The notes under the pieces: generated by a model
Database searches by the model: none
The model's input: the letters and a program-made list of their open reading frames with translations, nothing else
Told to the model about the DNA's origin: nothing
Origin: Octopus sinensis
Taxonomy: Eukaryota
DNA length: 64,000 bases
Assembly (NCBI RefSeq): GCF_006345805.1
Contig: NC_043024.1
Coordinates: 14,632,001-14,696,000 of the forward strand
Direction: 5' to 3'
In this document: positions 12,640 through 64,000 of the stretch, one piece after another
Numbering within the stretch: the stretch's first letter is position 1
Layout of the letters: each line of letters begins with the position of its first letter
Translations under genes and position numbers: made by a program

Positions 12640-12669
12640 GGAAAACTGGCCCAAACTGTACTCACACTG
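12640..12669 (+). CDS. Probable 30-nt phase-1/phase-1 micro-exon of the mucin-like gene, encoding xG-KTGPNCTHT
   Basis: Acceptor ctctttgattacag|G and donor CTG|gtatgg. Length 30 = 2+27+1, open in the phase that joins the 20023 exon. Alternative reading: an ATG at 12694 (MKCLYILSLFDFTFSISATADAGK, signal-peptide-like) spliced at weaker donors 12767 or 12773, also phase 1. Confidence 0.45.
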
Positions 12670-12807
12670 GTATGGATATTTTAATATCAATATATGAAAT
12701 GTCTTTATATTTTATCATTGTTTGATTTCACTTTTTCAATATCAGCGACAGCGGACGCTGGAAAAAGTATAAGTATTTGTGAAGGAAATCTAATTCTCGC
12801 CGACAAC

Positions 12808-12868
12808 TATGATTGTCACACGCTGACGAGAGGTCAATACCTCGAAACTCGAGTCCGTGTGTATCATA
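12808..12868 (+). ncRNA. Type I minimal hammerhead ribozyme (intronic, sense strand)
   Basis: Stem I CACACG(12817-22)/CGUGUG(12856-61); core CUGACGA(12823-29); stem II GAGG/CCUC with loop UCAAUA; GAA; stem III AC/GU with UCGA loop; GUC cleavage triplet (after 12855). Distal stem I extension UAUGAU/AUCAUA. Confidence 0.85.
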
Positions 12869-14566
12869 AGTTGAAGACGGGAAGGATGACTTCCCTTTGC
12901 AAATACTGACAGGACACAGAAAGTGTGTCTATGGCCAGCTGGAGGAGTGTGTCCTCCTGGGGCTAAAAACTACAGTAGCATCCACCCTTAGGGGTTAGCC
13001 ATATTGAAATGGCAAATATACGTCACTTTATATTTTAATTATATATACTTATTATAAGTACAAATTGCCAGTTCTATAACATGGAAGCAGTGAAAATACC
13101 TTGGTCTATAGTTGGTTGTTTTTATTTTGTTAAAGTTAATGTTTATTGTGAAGCCAAAAAGATCATCTTAATCTCAGGATACTTGTCTCACATTTGAATA
13201 CTCCTTTGCTAAGTTTTGTATGAAGAATGTATCTATATTCTGTTGTGTCTGGGGAGAGTCATTTTCTTTTTGTACCTTATAATGTAACACACTCACCAGT
13301 AAAATTTCCACTTTTTCTTCTTTTTTTTTTATTTTCCTAAAATTTTCAATAGTCTTGACTAAGAAAAAAGTGAAATTTTACCAGTGAGTGTGTTACATTA
13401 TAAGGCACAAAAAGAAAATGACTCTCCCCAGATACAACAGAATATGCTTCAACACATGAACTCATATAAAGAATCTTGCAAACCAAATCCAAAAACGAAA
13501 TGTATCTATAGACAATTGAAAAAACATTGCAGATTAAAATGGAAGAATCACAACATATTTATGGAATATGCAGAATGATAGGTTCTTAAAATGTTGAAAG
13601 AATGGTGGATGAGAGTTGTATTCTTCAGGAGATGATACATAGATTGCTACTTCAATTAAGGAAGATCTGTTACAGTTGAGGTACAAAGGGCAGCGTGACA
13701 CTGAGAGTTTTAATCAAAGATACACAACGATCTATTGTTGTAGATGTGTTATAGAGAGACAATTTGAAAAATACATAGATCGTAATATGGGAATTTGTAT
13801 CCAAGATTACCATTTACATTTTATTTAATACTATATTCTATATTATATAAATGTACATTTGAGGTATTGAAGTTTTGTGTAAACCTGTTTATAATACAAA
13901 TATAATGTCACTCTTTGACAGCTCCACCTGGTTCTCCTATATCATCCACAGGTATGTATATTTTACGCTAAAAAATTCTTTCTGTATTTCTCTTTTTTTT
14001 CTCTTTTATTTGTTTCAGTCATTTGACTGCGGCCATGCTGGAGCACCGCCTTTAGTCGAGCAAATTGACCCCGGGACTTATTCTTTGTAAGCCCAGTACT
14101 TATTCTATCAGTCTCTTTTTGCCGAACCGCTAAGTGACGGGGACGTAAACACACCAGCATCGGTTGTCAAGCAATGCTAGGGGGACAAACACAGACACAC
14201 AAACACACATACATATATATATATATACATATATACGACAGGCTTCTTTCAGTTTCCGTCTACCAAATCCACTCACAAGGCATTGGTCGGCCCGGGGCTA
14301 AAGCAGAAGACACTTGCCCAAGATGCCACGCAGTGGGACTGAACCTGGAACCATGAGGTTGGTAAGCAAGCTACTTACCACACAGCCACTCCTGCGCCTA
14401 TGTTACAACTTTATAATGGAAGTTCTCAGACTCTCTCTCTCTTCATATTTTCTTAAATGTGTTGTTTTTTTTTTCATCCTGGATGATTGAATTGAAGTGG
14501 TAACCTTTATATGATGGTAATACACATCTACCTTCATGCTCATTATGCATATGTGTATATGTATTT

Positions 14567-14790
14567 CTTTACTACCCACAAGGGGCTAAACATAGAGGGG
14601 ACAAACAATGACAGACAAACAGATTAAGTCGATTATATCGACCCAGTGCGAAACTGGTACTTTATTTATCGACCCCGAGAGGATGAAAGGCAAAGTCGAC
14701 CCCGGCGGAATTTGAACTCAGAACGTAACGACAGACGAAATACAGCTAAGCATTTCGCCCGGTGCGCTAACGTTTCTGCCAGCTCGCCGC
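14567..14790 (-). mobile_element. tRNA-derived SINE, family D
   Basis: Head ggcgagctggcagaaacgttagc...gttcaaattccg and central gcctttcatcctctcggggtcgataaataaagtaccag. Copies at about 10055-10245(+), 25375-25480(+) and 27610-27745(-). Confidence 0.75.
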
Positions 14791-14828
14791 CTGCATATGT
14801 GTATATATATGTGTGTGTGTGTATATGT

Positions 14829-14869
<41 letters not shown>

Positions 14870-16226
14870 TACACTCACGGAGTGGTTGGCGTTAGGAAGG
14901 GCATCCAGCTGTAGAAACACTGCCAGATCAGACTGGAGCCTGGTGCAGCCTCCTGGCTTCCCAGACCCCGGTCGAAACTGTTCAACCCGTGCTAGCACGG
15001 AAAACGGACGTTAAACGATGATGATGATGATATATGAGCACCATCCGAGTGTAATCATTGCCAGAGCAGCCAACTGGCTTCCATGCCGGTGGCATGTAAA
15101 AGGGTACCATTCGAGCGTGATCATTACCAACGTTGCCTTACTGGCACCTGTGCTGGTGGCATGTGTAAAAAGATTCAAGTGAGGTCATTGCCTGTACCAC
15201 TTGACTGGCCCCCATTCCAGTGGCACGTAAAAAGCACCCACTACACACTTGGAGTGGTTGGCATTAGGAAAGGCATCCAGCTGTAGAAACTCTGCCAGAT
15301 CAAGATTGGAGCCTGGTGCACCCATCTGGTTCACCAGCCCTCAGTCAAAATCGTCCAACCCATGTTAGCATGGAAAGCGGACGTTAAGCGATGATGATGA
15401 TGATATATATATATATATATATATACTCTTTTCTTGTTTCAGTCATTTGACTGTGGCCATGCTGGAGCACCGCCTTTAGTCGAGCAAATCGACTCCAGGA
15501 CTTATTTTTTGTAAGCCTAGTACTTATTCTATTGGGCTCTTTTGCTGAACCGCTAAGTTATGGGGATGTAAACACTCCAGCATCAGTTGTCAAGCGATGT
15601 AAGGGGGACAAACACAGACACACAAACATATGCACACACATACATATATATGTATACATATATAAGACAGGCATCTTTCAGTTTCCGTTTACCAAATCCA
15701 CTCACAAGGCTTTGTTCGGCCCTAGGTACCATGCAGTGGGACTGAACCCACAACCATGTGGTTGGTAAGCAAGCTACTTACCACACAGCCACTCCTGCGC
15801 CTATATATATATATATATATATATGTGCATGGACAATGGACATTAAACAATGATGTATATACAAGTACTAAAGTATATCTGTATGTATGTGTATATATAT
15901 ATATATATAATACTCACAGACACACATATCCACGCCTATGTATGACACATGCATGTGTGTCTTAGACTGGCTGCCTTAATAAGGTTAAGGACTTCAATCA
16001 ACCAATAAAATGAGGGGCTTCCATAATCATTCAGTTATCTTACTTTGGCTCTTCAAGAGATATGAGTTATTGAGGGGAGGAGATGGGGATATGCATGTGG
16101 TACAAGCATGTAACTTTTCTGTCGAAGTGTACAGATATCTCTTCAAGTCTCTAAGCAATGGATTCGTGGTGGAATGTCCGGGCTTAAAGAGCTGGAAGCA
16201 CAATCATAAATCAGCATGAAGGTAGC

Positions 16227-16625
16227 TTAACCCTTTCGTTACTGTATTTATTTTGAGATGCTCTATGTTTTTTCAATTACTTCAAATACAACAAAAGAAT
16301 TTAGTAAAATAACTTGGTTATCATTCAGCTAGTGTTAGGAATATAAATTATGACTAAGGTTTGGTGGAAGATTCTAATTCAAAACTTATGAAAACAAGAC
16401 ATTTGTACTACAGAGCCAGAGCCAGTTTCAGTCAGGTTGGTAACAAAAGGGTTAAATATAACAAAGAATTTAGTAAAATAACTTGGTTATCATTAAGCTA
16501 GTGTTAGGAAAATAAATTATGACTAAGGTTTGGTGGAAGATTCTAATTCAAAACTTATGACAACAAGACATTTGTACTACAGAGCCAGAGCCAGTTCCAG
16601 GCGGGTTGGTAACAAAAGGGTTAAG
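16227..16625. mobile_element. piggyBac-like MITE plus a partial tandem copy
   Basis: ttaaccctttcgttac...gtaacaaaagggttaa, followed by a 5'-truncated repeat ending aaaagggttaa. Confidence 0.7.
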
Positions 16626-16894
16626 GCCATTGAATGTGGCTGCATTGTTGACAGAACAGCAATAAGTTTCAGCAAGGCCACAATCTATGTTGGTGTGTTT
16701 GCATCAGCTAAGTGACCGGGCTTAAGAAAAGATAATTATTGGGGTTGACTTGTCCAGCTAAAATTCTGCATAGCTGCAGTTTAATGATTGAAATAAATGA
16801 AAGAAAATTGAAGAACAAAACAATGGCTAATTATTATTTCACTCTTATAAAGCACTAAAATCGTAATTTCTTTTTTCTTTAAAACAATTTGGAA

Positions 16895-17460: not shown

Positions 17461-17596
17461 GGGACGTATATGGAATATTCTTTATGTAATCCCTATTATT
17501 TATGTAAACAAGCCTCTTGTAGCATTTAAAAGTATACATGTGACACATAAAAATTTCTATTAGTTCTTAAGAGTAAAAGAGTTTATAATATAAATT

Positions 17597-17640
17597 TACT
17601 AGCAGTATAGCCCGGCGTTGCTCAGGTTTGTTTTTTAGTT
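17597..17640 (-). mobile_element. Helitron 3' terminus
   Basis: The reverse complement reads caaacctgagcaacgccgggctatactgctagta, matching 12343-12375. The element's 5' extent is not resolved. Confidence 0.6.
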
Positions 17641-19878: not shown

Positions 19879-20022
19879 TATGGATTTTTGTTAATCCTTT
19901 ATTAATTTAATCAAATTGCCTCTAGGATGAAAAGTATACATGTGACACATTGAAGAATTTTATTAATTATTAACAATGAAAAAAACAATATATGATGCAA
20001 ATAAATTGCCATTTTGTTGCAG

Positions 20023-20058
20023 GACCAAGTGTGTCTGGCGCAGCTGTTACTCCAGCAG
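20023..20058 (+). CDS. 36-nt phase-1/phase-1 micro-exon (G-PSVSGAAVTPA)
   Basis: Acceptor ccattttgttgcag and donor CAG|gtaagg. GC-rich island in an AT-rich intron. Its frame joins exon 28439 without a stop. Confidence 0.75.
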
Positions 20059-20124
20059 GTAAGGACACTTCTACTGTTTGTTTAGTCTTATTATGAAAGT
20101 ATTTCTTTTTCCTGCCTTTAACCC

Positions 20125-28438: not shown

Positions 28439-28701
28439 TTAAAAAGTGCAGATTTATGGATGGAATGGCAAATGGGAATTTGATCCCAGATTCTGATATC
28501 TTCATCTCCACTAAGGAATCTCCAGAAGTGCTACGGCCATCTGGAATAGGTTGGAAAATAAAGCCATTTGCTTCATCAAAACTTGAAGTTAAAATTGATA
28601 ACAACATTTTGAAATATGGAGCAGTCGTTATTTTACGGGAACATAAAAATGTAGCTACGTTTTCCATAAGTTTCCAGAAAGATCATTCAAATGTAATAAG
28701 G
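28439..28701 (+). CDS. Exon: N-terminal part of degenerate discoidin/F5-8 type C-like domain, copy 1 (VKKCRFMDGMANGNLIPDSDIF...LRPSGIGW...SNVIR)
   Basis: Acceptor ttcttgttttag, donor AGG|gtaagt, 263 nt (phase 1 to 0), no stops. The motif C-x3-DGM-x5-IPDS...LR...GW resembles the FA58C start C-xx-PLGM-x3-IPDSQI...ARL...GW. Near-identical paralogous exon at 34433. Confidence 0.85.
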
Positions 28702-32637: not shown

Positions 32638-32773
32638 AGTTTCGGAGCAACTGAAAATGGTACCATACCACAAGGAACAAATGCAGACCAGATTCTGATT
32701 CACTTTCAATCGGTAAACTCACAGGAAGCAATGACTGTCACTATGTCAATTATTGCCTGTTTCCAAACAATAA
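32638..32773 (+). CDS. Exon: C-terminal part of discoidin-like domain, copy 1 (SFGATENGTIPQGTNADQILIHFQSVNSQEAMTVTMSIIACFQTI)
   Basis: Acceptor tctttttttgaaatag, donor A|gtaagt, 136 nt (phase 0 to 1). Ends VTMSIIAC, similar to the FA58C terminal LRxELxGC. Contains an N-G-T sequon. Confidence 0.85.
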
Positions 32774-34137: not shown

Positions 34138-34179
34138 CGCCATCAAGTCCAACACCATATTTAGGACCGAGTCCAACAG
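34138..34179 (+). CDS. 42-nt Pro/Ser/Thr linker exon (T-PSSPTPYLGPSPT)
   Basis: Acceptor ctttgcatttccag, donor CAG|gttagt, phase 1 to 1. Bridges domain copy 1 and copy 2 in frame. Confidence 0.8.
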
Positions 34180-34432: not shown

Positions 34433-34695
34433 TTGAAAATTGCAGATTTATGGATGGAATGGCAAATGGGAATTTGATCCCAGATTCTGATATATTCATC
34501 CCCACTAAGGAATCTCCAGAAGTGCTACGGCCATCTGGAATAGGTTGGAAAATAAAGCCATTTACTTCATCACAACTTGAAGTTCAAATTGATAACAACA
34601 TTTTGAAATATGGAGCAGTCGTTATTTTGCGGAAGCATAAAAATGTAGCGACGTTTTTGATAATTTATCAGAAAGATCATTCAAACGTAATAAGG
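34433..34695 (+). CDS. Exon: N-terminal part of discoidin-like domain, copy 2 (VENCRFMDGM...SNVIR)
   Basis: Same 263-nt length and splice sites as 28439-28701; 10 amino-acid differences by my count. Confidence 0.85.
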
Positions 34696-35477: not shown

Positions 35478-35613
35478 AGTTTCAAAGCAACTGAAAATGG
35501 TACCATACCACAAGGAACGAATGTAGACCAGATTCTGATTCACTTTCGATCGGTAAACTCAGAGGAAGCAATGACTGTCACTCTGTCAATTATTGCCTGT
35601 TTCCAAACAATAA
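35478..35613 (+). CDS. Exon: C-terminal part of discoidin-like domain, copy 2 (SFKATENGTIPQGTNVDQILIHFRSVNSEEAMTVTLSIIACFQTI)
   Basis: Same 136-nt length and splice sites as 32638-32773; 5 amino-acid differences. Its phase-1 donor matches the phase-1 acceptor at 45671. Confidence 0.85.
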
Positions 35614-45670: not shown

Positions 45671-48600
45671 CAACAACAGAACAATATAAGTCAGCATCCA
45701 TTCCTTACACAACCAGTACAGTTACACCAATGACAAATATCATTACCAAGACATCGTCTCCTACTAAGATTATAACCACCATGACCAATAAATTAAACGC
45801 AACTACAATCCGTACACAAGCATTTTCTTCCACATCTCTTGGCAAAACACCTTCAATATTACCAAGCACTACAACAACGAGACAACAAACACAGGTACCA
45901 TCAGCAACAACCTCAATACCATCAGCAACAACCTCAGTACCATCAGCAACAACATCAATACCATCAGCAACAATATCGATACCATCAGCAACAACATCCA
46001 TACCATCAGCAACAATATCGATACCATCAGCAACAACATCCATACCATCAGCAACAATATCGATACCATCAGCAACAACATCCATACCATCAGCAACAAT
46101 ATCGATACCATCAGCAACAACATCCATACCATCAGCAACAAATCGATACCATCAGCAACAACATCCATACCATCAGCAACAATATCGATACCATCAGCAA
46201 CAACATCCATACCATCAGCAACAATATCGACACCATCAGCAATGACAACAACACCAGCAACAAAGGCATCAATACTGTCAACAACATCAGTAATACCATC
46301 TGCAACAATATCAATACCTTCCACAATTACATCAATACCATCGGCAACAATATCAGTGACAGCAGCAACAACTACAGTACCATCCCAAACAAAATGGATA
46401 GCATCAGTCATGACATCGATGTCAACAGCAACAACATCAATACCACTCGTAACATCAACACCATCAGCAATGACATCAATACCACCAGCAACAACAACAG
46501 TACCATCAACAATAACATCAATTCCATCAGCCACAACATCAACACTATCAGCAACAACATCATTACCATCAGCAACAACATCAATACCATCAGCGACAAC
46601 ATCAATACCATTAGCGACAACATCAATACCATCAGCAACAACATCAATACCGTCAGCAACAACATCAATACCGTCAGCCACTACATCAATACCATCAGAA
46701 ACTACATCAATACCATCAGCAAAAACTTTAATACCATCAGCCACTACATCAATAACATCAGCAACAACATCAATACCGTCAGCAGCAACATCAATACCAT
46801 CAGCAACAACATCAATACCATCAGCGACAACATCAATACCATCAGCAACAACATCAATACCATCACCAACAACATCAATACCGTCAGCAGCAACAGCAAT
46901 ACCATCAGCAACAACATCAATACCGTCAGCAACAACATCAATACCATCAGCAACAACATCCATAACATCAGCAGCAACATCAATACAGTCGGCAACAACA
47001 TCAATACCATCAGCAACGACATCAATACCATCAGCAACGACATCAATACCATCAGCAACGACATCAAAACCATCAGCAACAACATCGATACCATCAGCAA
47101 CAACAACAATACCATCAGCAACAACATCAATACCATCAGCAACAACATCAATACCATCAGCTACGACATCAATACCATCAGCAACAACATCAATACCATC
47201 AGCAACAACATCAATACCATCAGCAACAACATCAATACCGTCAGCCACTACATCAATACCATCAGAAACTACATCAATACCATCAGCAACAACTTTAATA
47301 CCATCAGCCACTACATCAATATCATCAGCAGCAACATCAATACCGTCAGCAACAACATCAATACCATCAGCAACAACATCAATACCATCAGCAACAACTT
47401 TAATACCTTCAGCAACAACATCAATACAATCAGCAACAACATCAATACCATCAGCAATAACATCAATACCATCAGCAACAACATACATACCATCAGCAAC
47501 AACATCAATACCACCAGCAACAACACCAACACTACCTGCCACTACATCAATACCATCAGCAACAACATCAATACCATCAGCAACAACATCAATACCATCA
47601 GTAATGACATCAATACCATCAGGAACGACAATACCATCAGTAATGACATCAATACCATCAGCAACAACATCAATACCGTCAGCAACAACATCAAAACCAT
47701 CACCAACAACAACAATACCATCACCAACAACATCAATACCATCAGCAACAACATCGATGCCATCAGCTACGACATCAATACCATCACCAACAACATCAAT
47801 ACCATCATCAACAACAACAATACCATCAGCAACAACATCAATATCATCAGAAACTACATCAATACCATCAGCAACAACTTTAATACCATCAGCCATTACA
47901 TCAATACCCTCAGCAACAACATCAATAACGTCACACCGAGCAACACATCACTACCGTCATCAACAACATCAATACCGTCAGCCACTACATAATACCATCA
48001 GCAAACACAATCAATACCATCAGCGACAACTTTAATACCATCAGGCACTACATCAATACCATCAGCAACAACATCAATACCATCAGCAACAACATCAATA
48101 CCATCAGCAACAACATCAATACCGTCAACAACAACATCAATACCATCAGCAACAACATCAATACCATCAGCAACAACATCAATACCATCAGCAACAACTT
48201 TAATACCTTCAGCAACAACATCAATACCATCAGCAACAACATCAATACCGTCAGCAGCAACATCAATACCATCAGCAAGAACATCCATAACATCAGCAGC
48301 AACATCAATACCATCAGCAAGAACATCCATAACATCAGCAACAACAACAATACCATCAACAAGAACATCCATAACATCAGCAGCAACATCAATACCATCA
48401 TCAAGAACATCCATAACATCAGCAGCAACATCAATACCGTCATCAACAAAATTAATACCGTCAGCAACAACATCAATACCGTCAGCAGCAACATCAATAC
48501 CATCAGCAACAACATCAATACCATCAGCAACAACATCAATACCATCATCAAGAACATCCATAACATCAGCAGCAACATCAATACCGTCAGCGACAACATC

Positions 48601-51600
48601 AATACCATCAGCAACAACATCAATACCATCAGCAACAACTTTAATACCTTCAGCAACAACATCAATACCATCAGCAACAACATCAATAACGTCAGCAGCA
48701 ACATCAATACCATCAGCAACAACATCAATACCATCAGCAACAACATCAATACCATCAGCAAAACATCAATACCATCAGCAACAACATTAATACCATCAGC
48801 AACAACATCAATACCATCAGAAACACATCAATACCGTCAGCAACAACATCAATACCATCAGCAACAACTCATAACAAACATCAGCAAGCACCATCAAAAT
48901 ACCATCAGCAAGAACATCAATAACATCAGCAACAACAACAATACCATCAGCAACAACATCAATACCGTCAGCAACAACATCAATACCAACAGCAACAACA
49001 TCAATACCATCAGCAACAACATCAATACAATCAGCAACAACATCAATACCGTCAGCAACAACATCAATACCATCAGCAACAACAGCAATACCATCAGCAA
49101 CAACATCAATACCATCAGCAACAACATCAATACCATCAGCAACAACATCAATACCATCAGCAACAACATCAATACCATCAGCAACAACATCAATACCGTC
49201 AGCAACAACATCAATACCATCAGCAACAACAGCAATACCATCAGCAACAACATCAATACCATCAGCAACAACATCAATACCATCAGCAACAACATCAATA
49301 CCATCAGCAGCAACATCAATACCATCAGCAACAACATCAATACCGTCAGCAACAACATCAATACCGTCAGTAAGAACATCCATAACATCAGCAACAACAT
49401 CAATACCATCAGCAACAACATCAATACCGTCAGCAACAACATCAATACCATCACCAACAACATCAAAACCATCAGCAACAACATCAATACCATCAGCAAC
49501 ATCATCAATATCGTCAGAAACAACACCAATACCATCAGCAACAACATCAATACCATTAACAACAACATCAATACCATCAGCGACAACATCAATACCACCA
49601 GCAACAACATCAATACCATCAGCAGCAACATCAATACCGTCAGCAAAAACATCAATACCGTCAGCAACAACATCAATGCCATCAGCAACAACATCAATAC
49701 CATCAGCAGCAACATCAATACCGTCAGCAACAACATCAATACCACCAGCAACAACATCAATACCATCAGCAGCAACATCAATACCGTCAGCAACAACATC
49801 AATACCATCAGCAACAACATCAATGCCATCAGCAACAACATCAATACCATCAGCAGCAACATCAATACCATCAGCAACAACATCAATACCATCAGCAACA
49901 ACATCAATACCATCAGCAACAACATCAATACCGTCAGCAGCAACATCAATACCATCAGCAACAACATCAATACCATCAGCAACAACATCAATACCATCAG
50001 CAACAACATCAATACCATCAGCAACAACATCAATACCATCAGCGATAACATCAATACCACCAGCAACAACATCAATACCATCAGCAGCAACATCAATACC
50101 GTCAGCAACAACATCAATACCGTCAGCAACAACATCAATACCATCAGCAACAACATCAATACCATCAGCAACAACATCAATACCATCAGCAGCAACATCA
50201 ATAATCAACCATACCGCAACAACAACTCAATACCATCAGCAACACATCGATGCCATCAGCTACGACATCAATACCATCACCAACAACATCAATACCATCA
50301 TCAACAACAACAATACCATCAGCAACAACATCAATATCATCAGAAACTACATCAATACCATCAGCAACAACTTTAATACCATCAGCCATTACATCAATAC
50401 CCTCAGCAACAACATCAATACCGTCAGCAGCAACATCACTACCGTCATCAACAACATCAATACCGTCAGCCACTACATCAATACCATCAGCAACAACATC
50501 AATACCATCAGCGACAACTTTAATACCATCAGGCACTACATCAATACCATCAGCAACAACATCAATACCATCAGCAACAACATCAATACCATCAGCAACA
50601 ACATCAATACCGTCAACAACAACATCAATACCATCAGCAACAACATCAATACCATCAGCAACAACATCAATACCATCAGCAACAACTTTAATACCTTCAG
50701 CAACAACATCAATACCATCAGCAACAACATCAATACCGTCAGCAGCAACATCAATACCATCAGCAAGAACATCCATAACATCAGCAGCAACATCAATACC
50801 ATCAGCAAGAACATCCATAACATCAGCAACAACAACAATACCATCAACAAGAACATCCATAACATCAGCAGCAACATCAATACCATCATCAAGAACATCC
50901 ATAACATCAGCAGCAACATCAATACCGTCATCAACAAATAATACCGTCAGCACAACATCAATACCGTCAGCAGCAACATCAATCCATCAGCAACAACATC
51001 AATACCATCAGCAAAACACATCAATACCATCATCAAGAACTTCCATAACATCAGCCGCAAGCCCCAGCAACACATCAATACCGTCAGCGACAACATCAAT
51101 ACCATCAGCAACAACATCAATACCATCAGCAACAACTTTAATACCTTCAGCAACAACATCAATACCGCCAGCAACAACATCAATACCGTCAGCAGCAACA
51201 TCAATACCATCAGCAAGAACATCCATAACATCAGCAGCAACATCAATACCATCAGCAAGAACATCAATAACATCAGCAACAACAACAATACCATCAGCAA
51301 CAACATCAATACCATCAGCAACAACATCAATACCATCAACAACAACATCCATAACATCAGCAGCAACATCAATACCGTCATCAACAAAATTAATACCGTC
51401 AGCAACAACATCAATACCATCAGCAACAACATCAATACCATCAGCAACAACATCAATACCATCAGCAACAACATCAATACCATCAGCAACAACTTTAATA
51501 CCTTCAGCAACAACATCAATACCATCAGAAACACATCAATACCGTCAGCAGCAACACATCAATACCAGCACAAGAACATCCATAACATCAGCACAACATC

Positions 51601-54600
51601 AATACCATCAGCAACACCATCAATACCGTCAGCAACAACATCAATACCAACAGCAACAACTCAATACCATCAGCAACAACATCAATACAATCAGCACAAC
51701 ATCAATACCGTCAGCAACAACATCAATACCATCAGCAACAACAGCAATAACATCAGCACACACATCAATACCATCAGCAACAACATCAATACCATCAGCA
51801 CAACACATACCATCAGCCACACAATCAATACACTCATCAACAACATCAATACCGTCAGCAACAACATCCATACCATCAGCAACAACACATACCATCAGCA
51901 ACAACATCAATACCATCAGCAACAACATCAATACCATCAGCAACAACATCAATACCATCAGCAGCAACATCAATACCATCAGCAACAACATCAATACCGT
52001 CAGCAGCAACATCAATACCATCAGTAAGAACATCCATAACATCAGCAACAACACACATCAAAAAACATCAGCACAACATCAATACCGTCAGCAACAACAT
52101 CAATACCATCACCAACAACATCAATACCATCAGCAACAACATCAATTCCATCAGCACACATCAATATCGTCAGAAACAACAATAACCATCAGCAACGCAT
52201 CAATACCATTAACAAACACATCATACCATCAGCGAACACACAATCAATACCACCAGCAACAACATCATTACCATCAGCACGCAACATCAATACCGTCAGC
52301 AAAAACATCAATACCGTCAGCAACAACATCAATGCCATCAGCAACAACATCAATACCATCAGCAGCAACATCAATACCGTCAGCAACAACATCAATACCA
52401 CCAGCAACAACATCAATACCATCAGCAGCACATCAATACCGTCAGCAACAACATCAATACCATCAGCAACAACATCAATGCCATCAGCAACAACATCAAT
52501 ACCATCAGCAGCAACATCAATACCATCAGCAACAACATCAATACCATCAGCAACAACATCAATACCATCAGCAACAACATCAATACCGTCAGCACAACCG
52601 CAACATCATCACAATCAGCAACAACATCAATACCATCAGCAACAACATCAATACCATCAGCAACAACATCAATACCATCAGCAACAACATCAATACCATC
52701 AGCGATAACATCAATACCACCAGCAACAACATCAATACCATCAGCAGCAACATCAATACCGTCAGCAACAACATCAATACCGTCAGCAACAACATCAATA
52801 CCATCAGCAACAACATCAATACCATCAGCAACAACATCAATACCATCAGCAGCAACATCAATACCGCCAGCAACAACATCAATACCATCAGCAACAACAT
52901 CGATACCATCAGCAACAACATCAATACCATCAGCGACAACATCAATACCATCAGCAACAACATCAATACCATCAGCGACCACATCAATACCATCAGCAAC
53001 AACATCAATACCATCAGCAGCAACATCAATACCGTCAGCAACAACATCAATACCATCAGCAACAACATCAATACCATCAGCAACAACATCAATACCATCA
53101 GCAACAACAACAATACCATCAGCAACAACATCAATACCATCAGCAACAACAACAATACCATCAGCAACAACATCAATACCATCAGGAAGAACATACATAC
53201 CATCAGCAACAATACCATCAGGAAGAACATACATACCATCAGCAGCAACATCAATACCGACAGCAACAACATCAATACCATCAGCAACTACATCAATACT
53301 ATCAGCAACAACATCAATACCATTAGCAACAACATCAATACCATCATCAACAACATCAATACCGACAGCAACAACATCAATACCATCGGCAATAACATCA
53401 ATACCATCAGCAACAACATCAATACCATCAGCCACAACATCAATACCATCAGTAACAACATCAATACCAACAGCAACAACATCAATACCAACAACCACAA
53501 CATCAATACCGTCAGCAACAACTTTAATACCTTCAGCAACAACACCAAGACCATCAGCAACAACTTTAATACCTTCAGCAGCAACATCAATACCGTCAAC
53601 AACAACATCAATACCATCAGCAACAACATCAATACCACCAGCAACAACATCAATACCATCAGCAACAACATCAATACCATCAGCAACAACATCAATACCA
53701 TCATCAGCAACATCAATACCGTCAGAAACAACATCAATACCATCAGCAACAACATCAATACCATCAACAACATCAATACCATCAGTAACAACATCAATAC
53801 CAACAGCAACAACATCAATACCAACAACCACAACATCAATACCGTCAGCAACAACATCAATACCATCAGCAACAACATCATTACCGTCAACCACAACATC
53901 AATACCGTCAGCAATAACATCAATACCAATAGCAACAACATCATTACCGTCAGCAACAACATCAATACCATCAGCAACAACATCAATCCCATCAGCAGCA
54001 ACATCAATACCATCATCAACAACATCAATACCGTCAGAAACAACATCAATACCATCAGCAGCAAGCATCAACACCATCAGCAACAACATCAATACCGTCA
54101 GCAACAACATCAATACCATCAGCAACAACATCAATACCATCAGCAACAACATCAATACCATCAGCAACAACATCAATACCATCAGCAACAACATCAATAC
54201 CGTCAGCAACAACATCAATACCATCAGCAAAAACATCAATACCATCAACAACAACATCAATACCATCAGCAACAACATCAATACCATCAACAACAACATC
54301 AATACCATCAGCAACAGCATCAATACCATCAGCAACAACATCAATACCGTCAGCAACAACATCAATACCATCAGCAACAACATCAATACCATCAGCAACA
54401 ACATCAATACCATCAGCAGCAACATCAATACCATCAGCAACAACATCAATACCATCAGCAATAACATCAATACCATCAGCAACAACATCAATACCATCAG
54501 CAACAACATCAATACCATCAGCAACAACATCAATACCATCAGCAACAACATCAATACCATCAGCAACAACATCAATACCGTCAGAAACAACATCAATACT

Positions 54601-57600
54601 ATCTGCAACAGCATCAATACCATTAACAACAACATCAATACCATCAGTAACAACATCAATACCAACAGCAACAACATCAATACCATCAGCCACAACATCA
54701 ATACCATCAGCAACAACATCACTACCATCAGCAACAACATCAATACCGTCAGCAACAACATCAATACCGTCAGCAGCAACGTCAATACCATCAGGAACAA
54801 CATCAATACCATCAACAACAACATCAATACCATCAGTAACAACATCAATACCATCAACAACAACATCAATACCATCAGCCACAACATCAATACCATCAGC
54901 AACAACATCAATACCATCAGCAACAACATCAATACCGTCAGCAATAACATCAATACCGTCAGCAGCAACGTCAATACCATCAGGAACAACATCAATACCA
55001 TCAGTAACAACATCAATACCATCAGCAACAACATCAATACCATCAGCAACAACATCAATACCGTCAGCAACAACATCAATACCATCAGCAACAACATCAA
55101 TACCATCAACAACAACATCAATACCATCAGCAATAACATCAATACCGTCAGCAGCAACGTCAATACCATCAGTAACAACATCAATACCATCAACAACAAC
55201 ATCAATACCATCAGCAACAACATCAATACCATCAACAACAACATCAATACCATCAGCAATAACATCAATACCGTCAGCAACAACATCAATACCATCAGCA
55301 ACAACATCAATGCCATCAGCAACAACATCAATACCATCAGCAGCAACATCAATACCATCAGCAACAACATCAATACCATCAGCAACAACATCAATACCAT
55401 CAGCAACAACATCAATGCCATCAGCAACAACATCAATACCATCAGCAGCAACATCAATACCATCAGCAACAACATCAATACCATCAGCAACAACATCAAT
55501 ACCATCAGCAACAACATCAATACCATCAGCAACAACATCAATACCATCAGCAACAACATCAATACCATCAGCAACAACATCAATACCGTCAGCAACAACA
55601 TCAATACCATCAGCAACAACATCAATACCATCAGCAACAACATCAATACCATCAGCAATAACATCAATACCGTCAGCAGCAACGTCAATACCATCAACAA
55701 CAACATCAATACCATCAGTAACAACATCAATACCATCAGCAACAACATCAATACCATCAGCAACAACATCAATACCGTCAGCAACAACATCAATACCATC
55801 AGCAACAACATCAATACCATCAACAACAACATCAATACCATCAGCAAAAACATCATTACCGTCAACAACAACATCAATACCATCAGCAACAACATCAATA
55901 CCATCAGCAACAACATCATTACCGTCAACAACAACATCAATATCATCAGTTACAACATCAATACCATCACCAACAACATCAATACCATCAGCAACAACAT
56001 CAATACCATCAACAACAACATCAATACCATCAGCAACAACATCAATACCATCAACAATACATCAATGCCATCAGCAAAAACATCAAGACCTTCAGCAATG
56101 ACAACAATACCATCAGTTGCGACATCAATACCATCAGCAACAACATCAATACCATCAACAATAACATCAATACCATCAGCAAAAACATCAAGACCTTCAG
56201 CAATGACAACAATACCATCAGTTGCGACATCAATACCATCAGCAACAACATCAATACCATCAGCAACAACATCAATACCATCAACAATAACATCAATACC
56301 ATCTGCAACAACATCAAAACCTTCAGCAACAACATCAATACCATCAGTGGCAACATCAATACCATCCATCACAACATCAAAACCATCAGCAACAACATCA
56401 AAACCATCTGCAATGACGTCAATATCAATAACCACATCGATACCAGCAGCAACAACAGCAATACCATCCACAAGAACATCAATGCCATCAGTAACCACAG
56501 CCATACCATTAGTAACAACATCAAAGCCATCCATGACAACATCAATATCATCCACAATGACATTGATACCATCGGCAACGATATCTGTACCATCTGCAAC
56601 TACATCAGTACCAACAACAACATCAATACCATCCAGAACAACATCACTGCCATCAGCCACATCAATACCACCAGCAACAACACCATTGCCATCAGCGATA
56701 ACTTCAACGCCATCTGCAAAATTATCAATGGCATCAACCATTATATCAATAGCATCCACATTGACATCAATACCGGCAGCAACAACATCAATACCATCCG
56801 TCACAACATCACTACCAACTGCAGCATCAACAACACCATCAACAACAATGTCAGTACCATCCACAACAAGCTCAATACCATCTACAACTTCAGCAACATC
56901 ATTAGCAACTACATCAATGCCATTCGCAAAGACACCAGTTACATCGGTAAAGTTATCTGTACCACCAACCACAATATCAATACCATTCGCAACCACAGTT
57001 ATACCATCAGCAGCAACGGCAGTAACATCTATCCTAGAAACAACAACATCAATACCCTCAGCATTCACATCTTTACCATCTGCAACAACATCAATACCAT
57101 CAGAAACAACATCAATACCATCAGCAACAACATCAATACCTTCAGCAACGACATCAATACCATCAGCAACAACATCAATTCCATCAGCAACAACATCGAT
57201 ACCATCAGCAACAACATCAATAACATCTAAAATGGCATCAATGCCATCCACAATGACATCAATACCATATGCACCAACATCTTTTACAACAGCAACAACT
57301 ACAATACCATCAGCAACAGCATCAGTTCCAACATCAATAGCAACCAGAACATATCTGCAAGCAGTGACCACGAGGCCCTCACAGGCCATACCTACTCTCA
57401 CAAGTCCCAAAGCAGCAACAATAAAGCAACTTCAACCCAGAACTACGTCAATACCTTCAAAAACGTTTATACCATCAACCACATCCATTGGGACATCTTC
57501 AAAATTCTTAGAGAAAAAAACGTCTTCAGTCGCAACTGAAACAACGACAACAGCGGTACCAAAATCACAATTAACATCAAAAAGCACAAGTACTCCAACA

Positions 57601-60600
57601 ACAATATCAATATCTGCATCAACCACGCTGTTACCGATAACTACTTCAATACCAGCAACTGCAACATTAATACCAACAATAACAACAGCCTCATTGTCGG
57701 GCACAAAATCTTTAATGCCAACAACATCAACACCAACCACTACATCACCAATAACTACAACATCAACTACAACACCAGCCACAAGTGCAATACCAACGGT
57801 ACCACAATCATATCAGTCAACAGCATCCTCGGTACCTTCCACATCATTTATCCCGACCACATCCATACATACATTAACTTCAGTGCCAACAAGGAATGTC
57901 AGACTAAGAACTAAAGTGGCATCAATACCTACAGCAACGGGAACGCCAATAAGAGTCATATCCACACAAAGTTCCCCAACGGCCAAGGAAGCATCAACTT
58001 CGAGAGTAGGGGGCCCATCTACAATAGGAGCTACACCAAAAATTCCCGTTAGCATTTCACCTTGTAAGGAAAAGACAGGAGGGAGAAAACAATATACAAC
58101 AACTGCGATACCAGCAACAGGAACAATGCCGACAGCAACTGCAACGTCAGTGCCAAATACAGCATCATCAACAAAGGGGACAATCCCATCGGGACCAACA
58201 ACTACATCACTACGACATATGACATCAATACCAATGATAATCCGATCAATACTAACAACAACATCAACACCGACAACAACATCAACACCATCAACAACAT
58301 CAATACCAACAACAACATCAATGCCAACAACAACATCACTAACAACAATACGATCAAGACACACAACAACATCAATACCTACAACATCAATACCCAAAAC
58401 AACATCAATACCAACTAAAACATCAATACTCACAACAACATCAATACCCACAACATCAAAACCCACAACAACATCAATACCCACAACATCAAAACCCACA
58501 ACAACATCAATACCAACAACAACATCAAGACCCACAACAACATCAATACCAACAACAACATCAAAACCCACAACAACATCAATACCCACAACGACATCAA
58601 AACCAACAACAACATTAATACCAACAACAACATCAATACCAACTAAAACATCAATACCCACAACAACATCAATACCCACAACATCAAAACCCAAAACAAC
58701 ATCAATACCCACAACAACATCAATACCCACAACAACATCAATAACAACTAAAACATCAATACCCACAACAACATCAATACCCACAACATCAAAACCCACA
58801 ACAACATCAAAACCCACAACAACATCAATACCCACAACGACATCAATAACAACAACAACATCAATACCAAAAACAACATCAATACCAACTAAAACATCAA
58901 TACCCACAACAACATCAATACCCACAACAACATCAATACCCACAACAACATCAATAACAACTAAAACATCAATACCCACAACAACATCAATACCCACATC
59001 ATCAAAACCCACAACAGCATCAATACCCACAACAACATCAATACCCACAACAACATCAACACCAACAACAACATCAATACCAACAACAACATCAATACCA
59101 ACAACAACATTAATACCAACAACAACAACAATACCAACTAAAACATCAATACCCACAACAACATCAATACCAACAACAACATCAAAACCCACAACAACAT
59201 CAATACCAACAACAACATCAATACCCACAACAACATCAATACCCACAACAACATCAACACCAACAACAACATCAATACCAACAACAACATCAATACCAAC
59301 AACATTAATACCACCAACAACATCAATACCAACTAAAACATCAATACCCACAACAACATCAATACCAACAACAACATCAAAACCCACAACAACATCAATA
59401 ATAACAACAACATCAATACCCACAACAACATCAATACCCACAACAACATCAATACCCACAACAACATCAATACCCACAACAACATCAATACCCACAACAA
59501 CATCAATACCAAAAACAACATCAATACCAACAACAACATCAATACCCGTAACAACATCAATACCCGTAACAACATCAATACCCACAACAACATCAATACC
59601 GACAACAACGCCAATACCTACAACAACATTAATACCCACAACAACATCAACACCAACAACAACATCAATACCAACAACAACATCAATACCCACAACAACA
59701 TCAATACCCGTAACAACATCAATACCCACAACAACATCAATACCCACAACATCAATACCAACACCAACATCAATACCAACAACAACATCAATACCCACAA
59801 CATCAAAACCCACAACAACATCAATACCCACAACAGCATCAATAATCACAACAACATCAATACCAACAACAACACCAATACCAACAACAACATCAATACC
59901 AACAACAACATCAATACCAACAACAACATCAATACCAACAACAACATTAATACCAACAACAACATCAATACCAACAACAACATCAATACCAACAACAACA
60001 TTAATACCAACAACAACAGCAATAACCACAACAACATCAATACCCACAACATCATCAATGCCCACAACAACATTAATACCAACAACAACATCAATACCAA
60101 CTAAAACATCAATACCAACAACAACATCAATACCCACAACAACATTAATACCAACAACAACATCAATACCAACTAAATCATCAATACCCACAACAACATC
60201 AATACCAACAACAACATCAATGCCCACAACAACATTAATACCAACAACAACATCAATACCAAATAAAACATCAATACCCACAACAACATCAATACCAACA
60301 ACAACATTAATACCCACAACAACATTAATACCAACAACAACATCAATACCAACAACAACATCAAAACCCACAACAACATCAATAATCGCAACAACAACAT
60401 CAATACCCACAAGAACATCAATACCAACAACAACATCAATACCCACAACAACATCAATACCCACAACAACATCAATACACCAACAACATCAATACCAAAC
60501 AACAACATCAATACCCAACATCAACATCAATAACCCAAACAACAACATCAATACCACAAACAACATCAATACCCACAACATCAATACCAACAACAACATC

Positions 60601-63600
60601 AATACCCACATCAACATCATAAGACCGCGTAACAACATCAATACCAAAATCAATACCAACAACAACATCAATACCCACATCAACATCAAACCCGTAACAA
60701 CATCAATACCCAACAACAACATCAATACCCACATCAACATCAATACCCACAACAACATCAATACCAACAACAACATCAATACCCACATCAACATCAATAC
60801 CCACAACAAGATCAATACCCACAACAACATCAATACACACAACAACATCAATACCAACAACAACATCAATACCCGTAACAGCATCAATACCGACAACATC
60901 AATACCAACAACAACATCAATACCCGTAACAACATCAATACCGACAACATCAATACCCACAACAACATCAATACACACAACAACATCAATACCAACAACA
61001 ACATCAATACCCGTAACAACATCAATACCGACAACATCAATACCAAAAACAACATCAATACCCGTAACAACATCAATACCGACAACATCAATACCAACAA
61101 CAACATCAATACCCGTAACAACATCTATACCGACAACATCAATACCAACAACAACATCAATACCCACAACAACATCAATACCCACAACAACATCAATACA
61201 CACAACAACATCAATACCCGTAACAACATCAATACCGACAACATCAATACCAACAACAACATCAATACCCGTAACAACATCAATACCAACAACATCAATA
61301 CCAACAACAACATCAATACCCACAACAACATCAATACCAACAACAACATCAATACCCACAACATCAATACCAACAACAACATCAATACCCGTAACAACAT
61401 CAATACCAACAACAACATCAATACCAACAACAACATCAATACCAACAACAACATCAATACCCACAACATCAATACCAACAACAACATCAATACCCGTAAC
61501 AACATCAATACCGACAACATCAATACCAACAACAACATCAATACCAACAACAACATCAATACCAACAACAACATCAATACCCACAACATCAATACCAACA
61601 ACAACATCAATACCCGTAACAACATCAATACCAACAACAACATCAATACCCACAACAACATCAATACCAACAACAACATCAATACCCACAACATCAATAC
61701 CAACAACAACATCAATACCCGTAACAACATCAATACCAACAACAACATCAATACCCACAACAACATCAATACCAACAACAACATCAATACCGACAACATC
61801 AATACCAACAACAACATCAATACCCGTAACAACATCAATACCGACAACATCAATACCCACAACAACATCAATACCCACAACAACATCAATACCCGTAACA
61901 ACATCAATACCGACAACATCAATACCAACAACAACATCAATACCCACAACAACATCAATACCCACAACAACATCAATACCCGTAACAACATCAATACCCA
62001 CAACATCAATACCAACAACAACATCAATACCCACAACAACATCAATACACACAACAACATCAATACCAACAACAACATCAATACCCGTACAATCAATACC
62101 CACAACATCAATACCAACAACAACATCAATACCACAACAACATCAATACCAACAACATCAATACAAACACAACAACATCAATACCACAACAACATCAATA
62201 CCCACAACATCAAACCAAACAACAACATCAATACCCACATCAACATCAATACCAACAAACACACAATACCAGCATAAAACATCAATACCCACAACAACAT
62301 CAATACCCACAACATCAAAACCCACAACAACATCAATACCAACAACAACATCAATACCCACAACAACATCAATACCCACAACATCAAAACCCACAACAAC
62401 ATCAATACCAACAACAACATCAATACCCACAACAACATCAATACCCACAACAACATCAATACCCACAACAACATTAATACCAACAACAACATCAATACCA
62501 ACTAAAACATCAATACCCCCAACAACATCAATACCAACAACAACATCAATACCCACATCAACATCAATACCAACAACAACATCAATACCAGCTAAAACAT
62601 CAATACCCACAACAACATCAATACCCACAACATCAAAACACACAACAACATCAATACCAACAACAACATCAATACCCACAACAACATCAATACCCACAAC
62701 AACATCAATACCCACAACAACATTAATACCAACAACAACATCAATACCAACTAAAACATCAATACCCACAACAACATCAATACCAACAACAACATCAATA
62801 CCCACAACAGCATTAATACCAACAACAACATCAATACCAACTAAAACATCAATACCCCCAACAACATCAATACCAACAACAACATCAATACCCACAACAG
62901 CATTAAAACCCACAACAACATCAATACCAACTAAAACATCAATACCCACAACAACATCAATACCAACAACAACGTCAATACCCACAACAACATTAATACC
63001 AACAACAACATCAATACCAACTAAAACATCAATACCCACAACAACAGCAATACCCACAACATCGAAACCCACAACATCAAAACCCACAACAACATCAATA
63101 CCCACAACAACATCAATACACGCAACAACATCAAAACCCACAACAACATCAATACCAACAACAGCATCAATACACGCAACAACATCAATACCCGCAACAA
63201 CATCAATACCCACAACAACATCAATACCAACAACAACATCAATACCAACAACAATATCAATACCCACATCAACATCAATACCAACAACAACATCAATACC
63301 CACAACAACATCAATACCCACAGAAACATCAATACCCGAAACAACATCAATACCCACAAGAACATCGATACGCACAACAACATCAATACCCGCAACAACA
63401 TCAATACCCGCAACAACATCAATACCCACAACAACATCAATACCCACAACAACATCAATACATACAACAACATCAATACCAACAACAACATCCATACCCA
63501 CAACAACATCAATACCCACAACAACATCAACGCCAACAACAACATCAACGCCCACAACAACATCAATACCCACGACGACATCAATACCAAAATCACCCTC

Positions 63601-64000
63601 AATACCCACAACAACATCAATACCCACCACAACATCAATACCTACAACAACATCAATACTCACAACAACATCAATACCCACAACAACATCAATACCCACA
63701 TCAATAACGACAAAGTCATCAATACCCACGACGATATCAATACCAAAAACAACATCAATACCCACAACAACATCAATAACCACAACATCAAAACCCACAA
63801 CAACATCAATACCCACAACAACATCAATACCCACAACAACATCAATACCCGCAACGACATCAATACCCGCAACAACATCAATACCCACAACAACATCGAT
63901 ACCCACAACAACATCAATACCAACAACAACATCAATACCTACATCAACATCAATACCAACAACAACATCAATACCCACAACAACCTCAATAACCACAACA
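45671..64000 (+). CDS. Giant PTS (Thr/Ser/Pro-rich) mucin-domain exon, >=18.3 kb (about 6100 aa), 3'-incomplete, with several apparent frameshifts
   Basis: Acceptor ttccatgttacag|CA in phase 1 gives T-TTEQYKSASIPYTTS. ORF-track segments in the T/S/P frame (45655-46245, 46242-48035, 49676-50941, 50250-, 55310-56101, 56065-) tile the region, shifting frame at 1-nt indels (e.g. about 46142 gcaacaaatcg vs gcaacaatatcg). I saw no obvious splice signals inside. Confidence 0.8.
45890..57250 (+). repeat. Coding tandem array of 21-bp units (aca aca tca ata cca tca gca = TTSIPSA), roughly 540 units by length
   Basis: Read directly. Variants include TTLIPSA, RTSITSA and TTSMPSA; the array degenerates from about 56400 onward. 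Confidence 0.95.
58250..64000 (+). repeat. Coding tandem array of 18-bp (and 15-bp) units (TTSIPT / TSIPT / TTSKPT), roughly 320 units, continuing past the window end
   Basis: Read directly: aca aca tca ata ccc aca / cca aca. Confidence 0.95.

What the first reader, a model, noticed from the sequence alone, without database searches (positions are those of the whole stretch)
12640..64000. Giant mucin-like gene: micro-exons, two degenerate discoidin-like domains and an exon of >=18 kb of PTS repeats
Seen: seven small exons with GT-AG boundaries and matching phases (1-1, 1-1, 1-0, 0-1, 1-1, 1-0, 0-1) splice in frame into a phase-1 acceptor at 45671, followed by >=18.3 kb of Thr/Ser/Pro repeat coding sequence. 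Known: PTS domains are the O-glycosylated core of mucins, and classic gel-forming mucins use N-terminal VWD/C8/TIL assemblies. Inferred: here the visible N-terminal globular part is a pair of FA58C-like domains rather than VWD, suggesting a distinct mollusc mucin or secreted glycoprotein class (mucus, ink, egg coat or sucker). An exon this large is also extreme and likely missed or fragmented by automatic annotation.
Basis: partly seen in the sequence, partly recalled or inferred. Interest (0 to 1): 0.85.

Follow-up and report, generated by a model that had tools for sequence, protein, structure and literature searches.

The report
Octopus giant mucin-like gene
This octopus locus most likely encodes part of a very large mucus-type glycoprotein, with small discoidin-fold domains followed by at least 18 kb of Thr/Ser/Pro repeats, and public annotations truncate it or read the repeats on the wrong strand.

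Summary
The seven exons exist with AG/GT borders and compatible phases. An eighth micro-exon (13922-13951) was missed. The exons match gene models in Octopus vulgaris (CAI9741633.1) and O. bimaculoides (XP_052833088.1).

The two ~128-aa Cys-bounded domains match no Pfam family and no solved structure by sequence. A confident AlphaFold model (pLDDT 93.7) is nonetheless closest to discoidin (F5/8 type C) domains. "Discoidin-like" therefore holds for the fold, not for family membership.

The repeat array (45896-64000) is real: PSATTSI heptads, a degenerate stretch, then IPTTTS hexads, with 66-81% Thr+Ser+Pro. It is not one open frame as assembled. The first stop is at 46243, and the Thr/Ser/Pro frame shifts 22 times.

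I still judge it coding. The orthologous O. vulgaris exon stays open for 1772 codons from the same acceptor. No frameshift is shared between the two assemblies. Stops are strongly avoided in that frame only.

No transcript evidence could be obtained. A chiton "mucin-2-like" protein has the same domain-plus-repeat layout. Verdict: a lineage-specific mollusc mucin-like gene, a new variant of a known kind, of moderate interest.

The parts
12640..12669 (+). Micro-exon, phase 1-1, encodes (G)KTGPNCTHT
   Evidence: AG/GT borders. 8 of 9 residues match ITGPNCTHT of O. bimaculoides XP_052833088.1.
13922..13951 (+).
   Evidence: AG/GT borders. 100% identical to XP_052833088.1 residues 851-860. Kept with its splice sites in O. 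vulgaris.
20023..20058 (+). Micro-exon, phase 1-1, encodes GPSVSGAAVTPA
   Evidence: 100% match to O. vulgaris CAI9741633.1 residues 11-22. Homologous to GPSVSAAGVTPS of O. bimaculoides.
28439..28701 (+). Exon A1, first two thirds of discoidin-fold domain 1 (phase 1-0)
   Evidence: One open frame only, AG/GT borders. 80-85% identical to the octopus proteins. Intact in O. vulgaris.
32638..32773 (+). Exon B1, last third of domain 1 (phase 0-1), ends ...IIACFQTI
   Evidence: P0002 reads straight across the A/B junction.
34138..34179 (+). Linker micro-exon, phase 1-1, encodes PSSPTPYLGPSPT
   Evidence: 93% identical to CAI9741633.1 residues 60-73. Resembles the SSSTPYLGSTPT linkers of O. bimaculoides.
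34433..34695 (+). Exon A2, first two thirds of domain 2. Tandem duplicate of A1 (93.5% nt identity)
   Evidence: (96.6% amino-acid identity to O. vulgaris).
35478..35613 (+). Exon B2, last third of domain 2 (duplicate of B1, 94.9% nt identity)
45671..45895 (+). Start of the large exon: phase-1 acceptor, then a 75-codon non-repetitive Thr/Ser-rich lead-in (TTEQYKSASIPYTTSTV...)
   Evidence: The frame continues from exon B2. 99.7% identical in O. vulgaris, with the acceptor kept. There the frame runs on for 1772 codons.
45896..56099 (+). 21-nt tandem array encoding PSATTSI heptads (222 exact copies). 19 of the 22 frame shifts lie here
56100..58244 (+). Degenerate, largely non-repetitive Thr/Ser/Pro-rich stretch between the two arrays
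   Evidence: 0 stops in the Thr/Ser/Pro frame against 38 and 5 in the other two plus-strand frames. Sequence shown.
58245..64000 (+). 18-nt (36/54-nt higher-order) array encoding IPTTTS hexads. Runs off the end of the window
   Evidence: Thr+Ser+Pro 73-81%.

Best explanation
The window holds the middle and 3' part of a very large, lineage-specific mucin-like gene of an Octopus vulgaris-group octopus.

Shown:
- Micro-exons encode short Gly/Pro/Ser/Thr/Val linkers.
- Two tandemly duplicated exon pairs each encode a ~128-residue domain bounded by Cys at both ends and predicted to adopt a discoidin (F5/8 type C)-like beta-sandwich.
- A phase-compatible acceptor at 45671 opens onto a Thr/Ser/Pro-rich array of at least 18 kb.

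Inferred:
- The array is one translated exon. Its product would be an extended, densely O-glycosylated 'bottle-brush'.
- The discoidin-fold modules, spaced along the polymer as CysD domains are in vertebrate gel-forming mucins, act as lectin-like or surface-binding nodes. They would cross-link or anchor the glycoprotein in mucus or another secreted coat.
- The 22 frame shifts in this assembly are mostly long-read consensus errors, not real lesions.
For: Gene and exons:
- The exons match octopus proteins at E 1e-93 and 1e-75. They correspond to RefSeq XP_052833088.1, whose layout is repeats, domain, linkers, domain, micro-exons, domain, Thr/Ser/Pro region, domain.
- All eight exons keep their frames and AG/GT sites in the O. 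vulgaris reference.

Domain fold:
- The AlphaFold model built from a 15-sequence alignment has pLDDT 93.7 and pTM 0.86.
- Its best PDB matches are factor VIII C2, neuropilin b1b2, a Bacteroides F5/8C domain and retinoschisin.

Array is coding:
- Its frame is the one delivered by exon B2.
- The O. vulgaris ortholog is open for 1772 codons from the same acceptor.
- None of the 38 frameshift contexts is shared between the two assemblies.
- In the tracked frame there are 3 stops against 72.7 expected from the C-to-A/G rate at second positions of ACA/CCA/GCA codons (P about 2e-28). The other two frames hold 165 and 24 stops.
- The degenerate stretch 56100-58240 has 0, 38 and 5 stops in the three frames.

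Same layout elsewhere:
- The chiton protein XP_064614628.1, named 'mucin-2-like', has seven copies of the domain between Thr/Ser/Pro linkers.
Against: - As assembled, the exon would terminate at 46243 and the Thr/Ser/Pro frame is broken 22 times.
- The O. vulgaris reference also has 16 shifts, clustered in a similar part of the array.
- No database protein covers the start of the large exon or the heptad repeats.
- None of the domain's tryptic peptides appear in the held supplements of an O. vulgaris skin-mucus proteome.
- No signal peptide, transmembrane segment or C-terminus is visible in the window.
- The duplicated domains differ by 5 synonymous and 15 non-synonymous codons. Window against O. 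vulgaris differs by 9 and 15. Constraint on the domains therefore looks weak.
- The stop-avoidance test counts repeat copies, not independent mutations.
Confidence: 0.7

Rival explanations
1. The array is a non-coding A/C-rich minisatellite lying in an intron or downstream of the gene. Its open frames are a by-product of composition, and the gene ends or continues elsewhere.
For: - All three plus-strand frames of the consensus unit, and two minus-strand frames, lack stops.
- The frame is broken in both assemblies.
- No protein or gene model contains it on the plus strand.
- The O. vulgaris locus also carries a plainly non-coding 9-kb (ACAT)n repeat after the assembly gap that follows the array.
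Against: - Stops are avoided in one frame only: 3 against about 73 expected, with 165 and 24 in the other frames.
- The non-repetitive stretch 56100-58240 is open only in that frame.
- The acceptor is in the right phase and is followed by a non-repetitive Thr/Ser-rich lead-in.
- In O. bimaculoides the homologous domain is also followed directly by a Thr/Ser/Pro region.
Confidence: 0.15
2. The large exon was once coding but is decaying in this lineage. The frame shifts are real, so at most a truncated protein ending near 46243 is made.
For: - Both assemblies show many 1-2 nt indels, concentrated 3-7 kb into the array.
- Constraint on the adjacent domains is weak.
Against: - No frame shift is shared between two genomes that differ by only about 2%.
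- The O. vulgaris copy lacks the window's first two shifts.
- Almost no stops have accumulated in the Thr/Ser/Pro frame.
- All upstream exons and splice sites are intact in both genomes.
Confidence: 0.12
3. The array is coding on the minus strand, as the C-terminal exons of the neighbouring K/Ca-exchanger gene, as annotated in O. vulgaris.
For: The model CAI-series 'potassium calcium exchanger 3-like isoform X2' ends with GIDVVADGIDVV... read from the minus strand of the array.
Against: - The genuine exchanger exons lie 27-66 kb away.
- The array-derived tail replaces the exchanger's expected last membrane segments with an acidic repeat.
- The minus-strand frame is open simply because the unit has no stop in it.
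Confidence: 0.02

Closest known systems
Octopus bimaculoides LOC106881592 (XP_052833088.1, 1260 aa) and Octopus vulgaris CAI9741633.1 (194 aa)
   Same: - The same domain at 81-95% identity.
- The same micro-exons (ITGPNCTHT, APPGSPISST, GPSVSAAGVTPS).
- A Thr/Ser/Pro-rich region directly after the domain.
- The O. vulgaris locus is collinear with window 12953-48449 at 93-99% identity.
   Different: - Neither model contains the giant heptad/hexad exon.
- O. bimaculoides shows a single domain at this position, followed by a different 17-residue repeat and a fourth, divergent domain.
- The O. vulgaris model is a truncated artefact that starts at an intronic ATG.
Liolophura sinensis (chiton) 'mucin-2-like' XP_064614628.1
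   Same: Seven copies of a homologous Cys-bounded domain (C.LEDGM..LPDDSI...IRP...) alternate with Thr/Ser/Pro linkers.
   Different: - Only about 22-24% identity.
- Its domain is about 20 residues longer.
- Its linkers are short, not a multi-kilobase array.
F5/8 type C (discoidin) domains: factor VIII C2, neuropilin b1/b2, retinoschisin, CBM32
   Same: - The predicted beta-sandwich is closest to these (Foldseek E 1e-4 to 5e-3, TM 0.57-0.64).
- Cys residues sit at both ends of the domain, as in FA58C (my own knowledge of the family).
- A loosely similar start motif (C...DGM...IPDS.I).
   Different: - About 128 residues against about 150-160.
- 10-17% identity.
- No hit to Pfam PF00754 or to any PDB sequence, even with a family profile.
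Vertebrate gel-forming mucins (MUC2, MUC5AC, MUC5B, MUC19)
   Same: - A very large central exon of Thr/Ser/Pro tandem repeats, and small Cys-containing globular domains interspersed in the repeat region (the CysD analogy). These mucin features are from my own knowledge.
- Repeat units that turn over quickly between species.
   Different: - No VWD, C8 or TIL detected in the visible parts.
- The interspersed domain has a discoidin fold, not CysD.
- The ends of the gene were not seen.
'Orphan' mucins that arise by gain of exonic Thr/Ser/Pro repeats (Pajic et al. 2022, PMC9417175)
   Same: Mucins there are defined by function, not ancestry, and arise repeatedly through exonic repeat expansion (abstract). 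This gene fits that pattern.
   Different: That study concerns mammals. No mollusc case with discoidin-fold modules was found in the literature searches.

Membership tests
Mucin (functional class) | Long tandem-repeat region rich in Pro, Thr and Ser | tested here: met
   The array spans 45896-64000. Thr+Ser+Pro is 66-81% in the tracked frame, with 222 PSATTSI and 141 IPTTTS units.
Mucin (functional class) | The repeat region is translated as part of the protein | tested here: inconclusive
   For: phase-compatible acceptor, frame-specific stop avoidance, and 1772 open codons in O. vulgaris. Against: 22 frame shifts as assembled, and no transcript or protein evidence.
Mucin (functional class) | Dense O-glycosylation and secretion or membrane anchoring | not testable with these tools
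   Both ends of the gene lie outside the window. The O. bimaculoides model also lacks an obvious signal peptide at its start.
Gel-forming mucins (VWD-C8-TIL assemblies, C-terminal cystine knot) | N-terminal VWD, C8 and TIL domains | tested here: not met
   No such Pfam hit in the spliced window protein or in the 1260-aa O. bimaculoides model. Both are incomplete at the N-terminus, so absence from the whole gene is not proven.
Gel-forming mucins (VWD-C8-TIL assemblies, C-terminal cystine knot) | C-terminal cystine-knot dimerisation domain | not testable with these tools
   The window ends inside the array. The O. vulgaris reference has a 100-N gap in the array.
F5/8 type C (discoidin) domain, Pfam PF00754 | Sequence match to the family model | tested here: not met
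   No PF00754 hit at E <= 10 for the window protein, or at E <= 1 for five relatives. The family profile and single domains find no discoidin chain in the PDB at E <= 10.
F5/8 type C (discoidin) domain, Pfam PF00754 | Distorted jelly-roll beta-sandwich like factor VIII C2 | tested here: met
   The model has pLDDT 93.7. The top six Foldseek rows (five PDB entries) are discoidin domains, E 1e-4 to 6e-4, TM normalised to the query 0.46-0.64. The low-confidence single-sequence model already gave CBM32 as its top hit.
F5/8 type C (discoidin) domain, Pfam PF00754 | Disulfide joining the first and last residues of the domain | tested here: inconclusive
   The first Cys is invariant, and a C-terminal Cys is present in 11 of 12 full-length copies. 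Model coordinates could not be inspected, so the bond itself is not shown.
Unnamed mollusc domain family (octopus LOC106881592, chiton mucin-2-like) | Significant sequence similarity over the whole domain, with the conserved C...DGM...IPD..I...RP..GW...NV core | tested here: met

The most novel reading that the evidence does not exclude
The ~128-residue module is a mollusc-specific 'mini-discoidin' lectin that binds the O-glycans of the same or neighbouring molecules. Spaced along a giant Thr/Ser/Pro backbone, it would make a self-cross-linking mucus or adhesive. That would be a gel-forming principle independent of VWD/cystine-knot polymerisation, shared by cephalopods and chitons.
Probability: 0.15. 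Interest if true: 0.7.

Novelty: new variant of a known kind. Interest (0 to 1): 0.45.

Why it matters
If it is translated, this is one of the largest coding exons in an invertebrate. It would also be a clear case of a mucin built on a non-VWD scaffold, adding a mollusc example to the view that mucins arise repeatedly by repeat expansion.

The domain has no Pfam family yet is confidently predicted to have a discoidin fold. A family model for it would improve the annotation of mollusc secreted proteins.

In practice, the locus shows how current cephalopod annotations mishandle such genes. One model is truncated, and another is a chimera that borrows the array's reverse strand. This matters for anyone mining octopus mucus, adhesive or egg-coat proteomes against those databases.

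Tried and rejected
- Pfam scans of the spliced protein and of relatives gave only sub-threshold noise.
- Sequence and profile searches of the PDB found nothing.
- The single-sequence AlphaFold model was too weak to rely on (pLDDT 58). It was replaced by the alignment-based model.
- Most multi-stretch hits of the representative search (P0005, P0007, P0009, P0012, P0015, P0017) were short repeated partial matches and were discarded as spurious.
- The profile search in the word-indexed database returned only octopus proteins.
- A chimeric query combining the Thr/Ser/Pro frame with the minus-strand frame found no plus-strand protein. It found only the exchanger chimera and an unrelated amphioxus protein.
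- P0002 is not on record as a gene, and the O. bimaculoides gene range (158 kb) was too long for its DNA to be returned.
- The C-terminal fourth domain of O. bimaculoides has no detectable counterpart downstream of the O. vulgaris array.
- The held supplements of an octopus skin-mucus proteome contain none of six tryptic-peptide strings from the domain.
- A literature search for octopus + mucin + discoidin found no paper.
- I considered and rejected the idea that the long open frames prove coding. The consensus unit is stop-free in five of six frames.


Full report
**What the window is.** The sequence is eukaryotic: 33-45% G+C, with many microsatellites and interspersed repeats. The best protein match is a hypothetical protein of Octopus vulgaris, CAI9741633.1. 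Its locus (L001, OX597840.1:6392368-6426762) is collinear with window 12953-48449 at 93-99% identity. Exon divergence between the two is 2.3%. The window therefore comes from a very close relative, or from another assembly, of the O. vulgaris group.

**The exons.** Joined in the stated phases they give a single stop-free frame that enters the acceptor at 45671.

The exons are not chance open frames:
- The 263-nt and 136-nt exons are each open in one frame only.
- They match octopus proteins at E 1e-93 and 1e-75.
- P0002, and the RefSeq model XP_052833088.1 that clusters with it, read straight across the junction between the two exons.
- The micro-exons at 12640 and 20023 correspond to ITGPNCTHT and GPSVSAAGVTPS of the O. 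bimaculoides model.
It encodes APPGSPISST, identical to the O. bimaculoides residues.
- For seven of the eight exons the orthologue was located in the O. vulgaris reference and keeps AG/GT and an open frame. The automated match failed for the 42-nt linker exon, but its peptide is 93% identical to residues 60-73 of the O. vulgaris model.

The two exon pairs are a recent tandem duplication. The exons are 93.5% and 94.9% identical, and the flanking intron sequence 92.6% and 90.3%.

The gene also extends upstream of the window. The O. bimaculoides model spans 158 kb and has two more domains and many more micro-exons before this part. A possible further micro-exon lies near 3672.

**The domain.** Each exon pair encodes about 128 residues that begin and end with Cys.
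- Pfam gives no F5/8 type C hit, nor any other hit above threshold. This holds for the window protein and for five relatives.
- A profile of 15 copies, and single domains, find no solved structure by sequence.
- An exhaustive HMMER search found few true relatives. These are other octopus copies, short genomic fragments of unknown origin, a metagenomic protein with a VWC domain plus four or five copies, and a chiton protein that NCBI names 'mucin-2-like', which has seven copies between Thr/Ser/Pro linkers.
- Without an alignment, AlphaFold gave a weak model (pLDDT 58) whose nearest fold was CBM32.
- With the 15-sequence alignment the model is confident (pLDDT 93.7, pTM 0.86).
- Its best PDB matches are discoidin domains: factor VIII C2 (E 1e-4, TM 0.60-0.64), neuropilin b1b2, a Bacteroides F5/8C domain, neuropilin-2 and retinoschisin.

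Membership of the sequence family was tested and not met. I treat the domain as an unnamed, divergent, shortened discoidin-fold family.

**The array.** Tandem Repeats Finder reports one array from 45896 to the end of the window. It has four parts:
- a 75-codon non-repetitive lead-in;
- about 10 kb of 21-nt units encoding PSATTSI;
- a 2-kb degenerate stretch;
- 18-nt units encoding IPTTTS.

Thr+Ser+Pro makes up 66-81% of the tracked frame.

The claim of at least 18.3 kb of coding sequence fails literally. The frame entered at 45671 stops at 46243, and a frame-tracking walk needs 22 shifts. The consensus unit is stop-free in five of six frames, so long open runs prove nothing by themselves.

**Why I still read it as coding.**
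- The acceptor delivers exactly the Thr/Ser/Pro frame.
- In the O. vulgaris reference the same exon is open for 928 codons to the end of L001, and for 1772 codons in the longer locus L002. It lacks the window's first two shifts.
- None of the 22 shift contexts in the window or the 16 in O. vulgaris is shared with the other assembly. Nearly all are single 1-2 nt indels in otherwise perfect units. That is what consensus errors in a long homogeneous repeat look like.
- Stops are avoided in one frame only. At the second-position C-to-A/G rate seen in ACA, CCA and GCA codons (5.7%), the 1269 TCA-class codons should have given about 73 stops. Three are seen (P about 2e-28). The other two frames carry 165 and 24 stops.
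- The degenerate stretch 56100-58240, where repeat structure cannot hold a frame open, has 0 stops in that frame against 38 and 5 in the others.

Caveats remain. The stop test counts repeat copies, not independent events. The shifts cluster 3-7 kb into the array in both assemblies, which I cannot explain. No transcript or peptide evidence was available.

**Annotation state.**
- The O. vulgaris model for this gene starts at an ATG inside the intron before 20023, skips parts of the domains and ends before the array.
- The minus strand of the array (GIDVVADG...) is attached as the last ~100 residues of a 'potassium calcium exchanger 3-like' model. The genuine exons of that gene lie 27-66 kb away, in convergent orientation.
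- The O. vulgaris reference has a 100-N gap after about 9 kb of the array, followed by 9 kb of (ACAT)n.

**How it probably works.** What is shown is a multi-exon gene that alternates short linkers, discoidin-fold modules and Thr/Ser/Pro repeats, and a giant array in the right frame. The rest is inference:
- The array is translated and heavily O-glycosylated, giving an extended hydrated polymer.
- The discoidin-fold modules bind glycans, lipids or matrix, as known discoidin domains do (my own knowledge of factor V/VIII, discoidin I, CBM32, DDR and neuropilin). They would serve as cross-linking or anchoring nodes, as CysD domains do in vertebrate gel-forming mucins.
- The tissue and the role (skin mucus, sucker, egg coat or gut) are unknown.

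Constraint on the domains looks weak: 5 synonymous against 15 non-synonymous codons between the duplicates, and 9 against 15 between the two genomes. That is compatible with fast-evolving secreted proteins but gives no positive support for function.

**Comparison and novelty.** Mucins are a functional class that arises repeatedly by exonic repeat expansion (PMC9417175). Multi-kilobase repeat exons are normal for them (my own knowledge of MUC16, MUC19 and MUC5B). The size is therefore large but not unprecedented.

What is unusual is the scaffold. It is a small discoidin-fold module with no family model, shared with a chiton mucin-like protein, and no VWD, C8 or TIL is detected in the visible parts. 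I rate this a new variant of a known kind, with moderate interest (0.45).

Noticed in passing
window 25597-26559 (+): A 321-codon open frame with a reverse-transcriptase domain (Pfam RVT_1, E 2.7e-16). It is a retroelement fragment inside the intron between 20058 and 28439.
   Followed up: partly
window 3868-4273, 5446-5860, 13987-14401, 15426-15804, 21725-22149, 22861-23273, 24750-25181, 29037-29428, 31838-32258, 37929-38327 and fragments: About 12 copies, in both orientations, of a ~415-bp interspersed SINE-like element at 84-94% identity. They sit mostly in the introns of this gene.
   Followed up: partly
window 1492-1566 (+): A tRNA-Met-like sequence (Rfam tRNA 32.4 bits; ARAGORN anticodon CAT). 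It could be a gene or a tRNA-derived repeat.
   Followed up: no
window 7558-9691, 11555-11780, 30114-31033: Three non-coding tandem repeats: 47-nt units x45 (22% G+C), 37-nt units x6, and 229-nt units x4 in the intron between exons A1 and B1.
   Followed up: no
L002 (O. vulgaris OX597840.1:6421010-6493009), reverse-complement coordinates 3004-3159 and 30026-69000: The O. vulgaris model 'potassium calcium exchanger 3-like isoform X2' is a chimera. Its first 528 residues map to genuine Na_Ca_ex exons, and its last ~100 residues are the minus strand of the mucin array.
   Followed up: yes
L002 reverse-complement 11997-12097 and 12605-21743: The O. vulgaris reference has a 100-N assembly gap after about 9 kb of the Thr/Ser/Pro array. 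After about 0.5 kb of non-repeat sequence, about 9 kb of (ACAT)n simple repeat follows. The array is therefore unresolved in that assembly.
   Followed up: partly
window 48755-52589; L002 reverse-complement 7294-9059: Frame shifts cluster 3-7 kb into the array in both assemblies (14 of 22 and 14 of 16), although none is shared. The cause is unexplained: either a hard-to-polish stretch or real decay.
   Followed up: partly
window about 3670-3700 (+): A possible further upstream micro-exon: an AG acceptor followed by VPRIRDPSVT, 9 of 11 residues matching AVPRIAGPSVT of O. bimaculoides. Its length would change the phase, so it is uncertain.
   Followed up: partly
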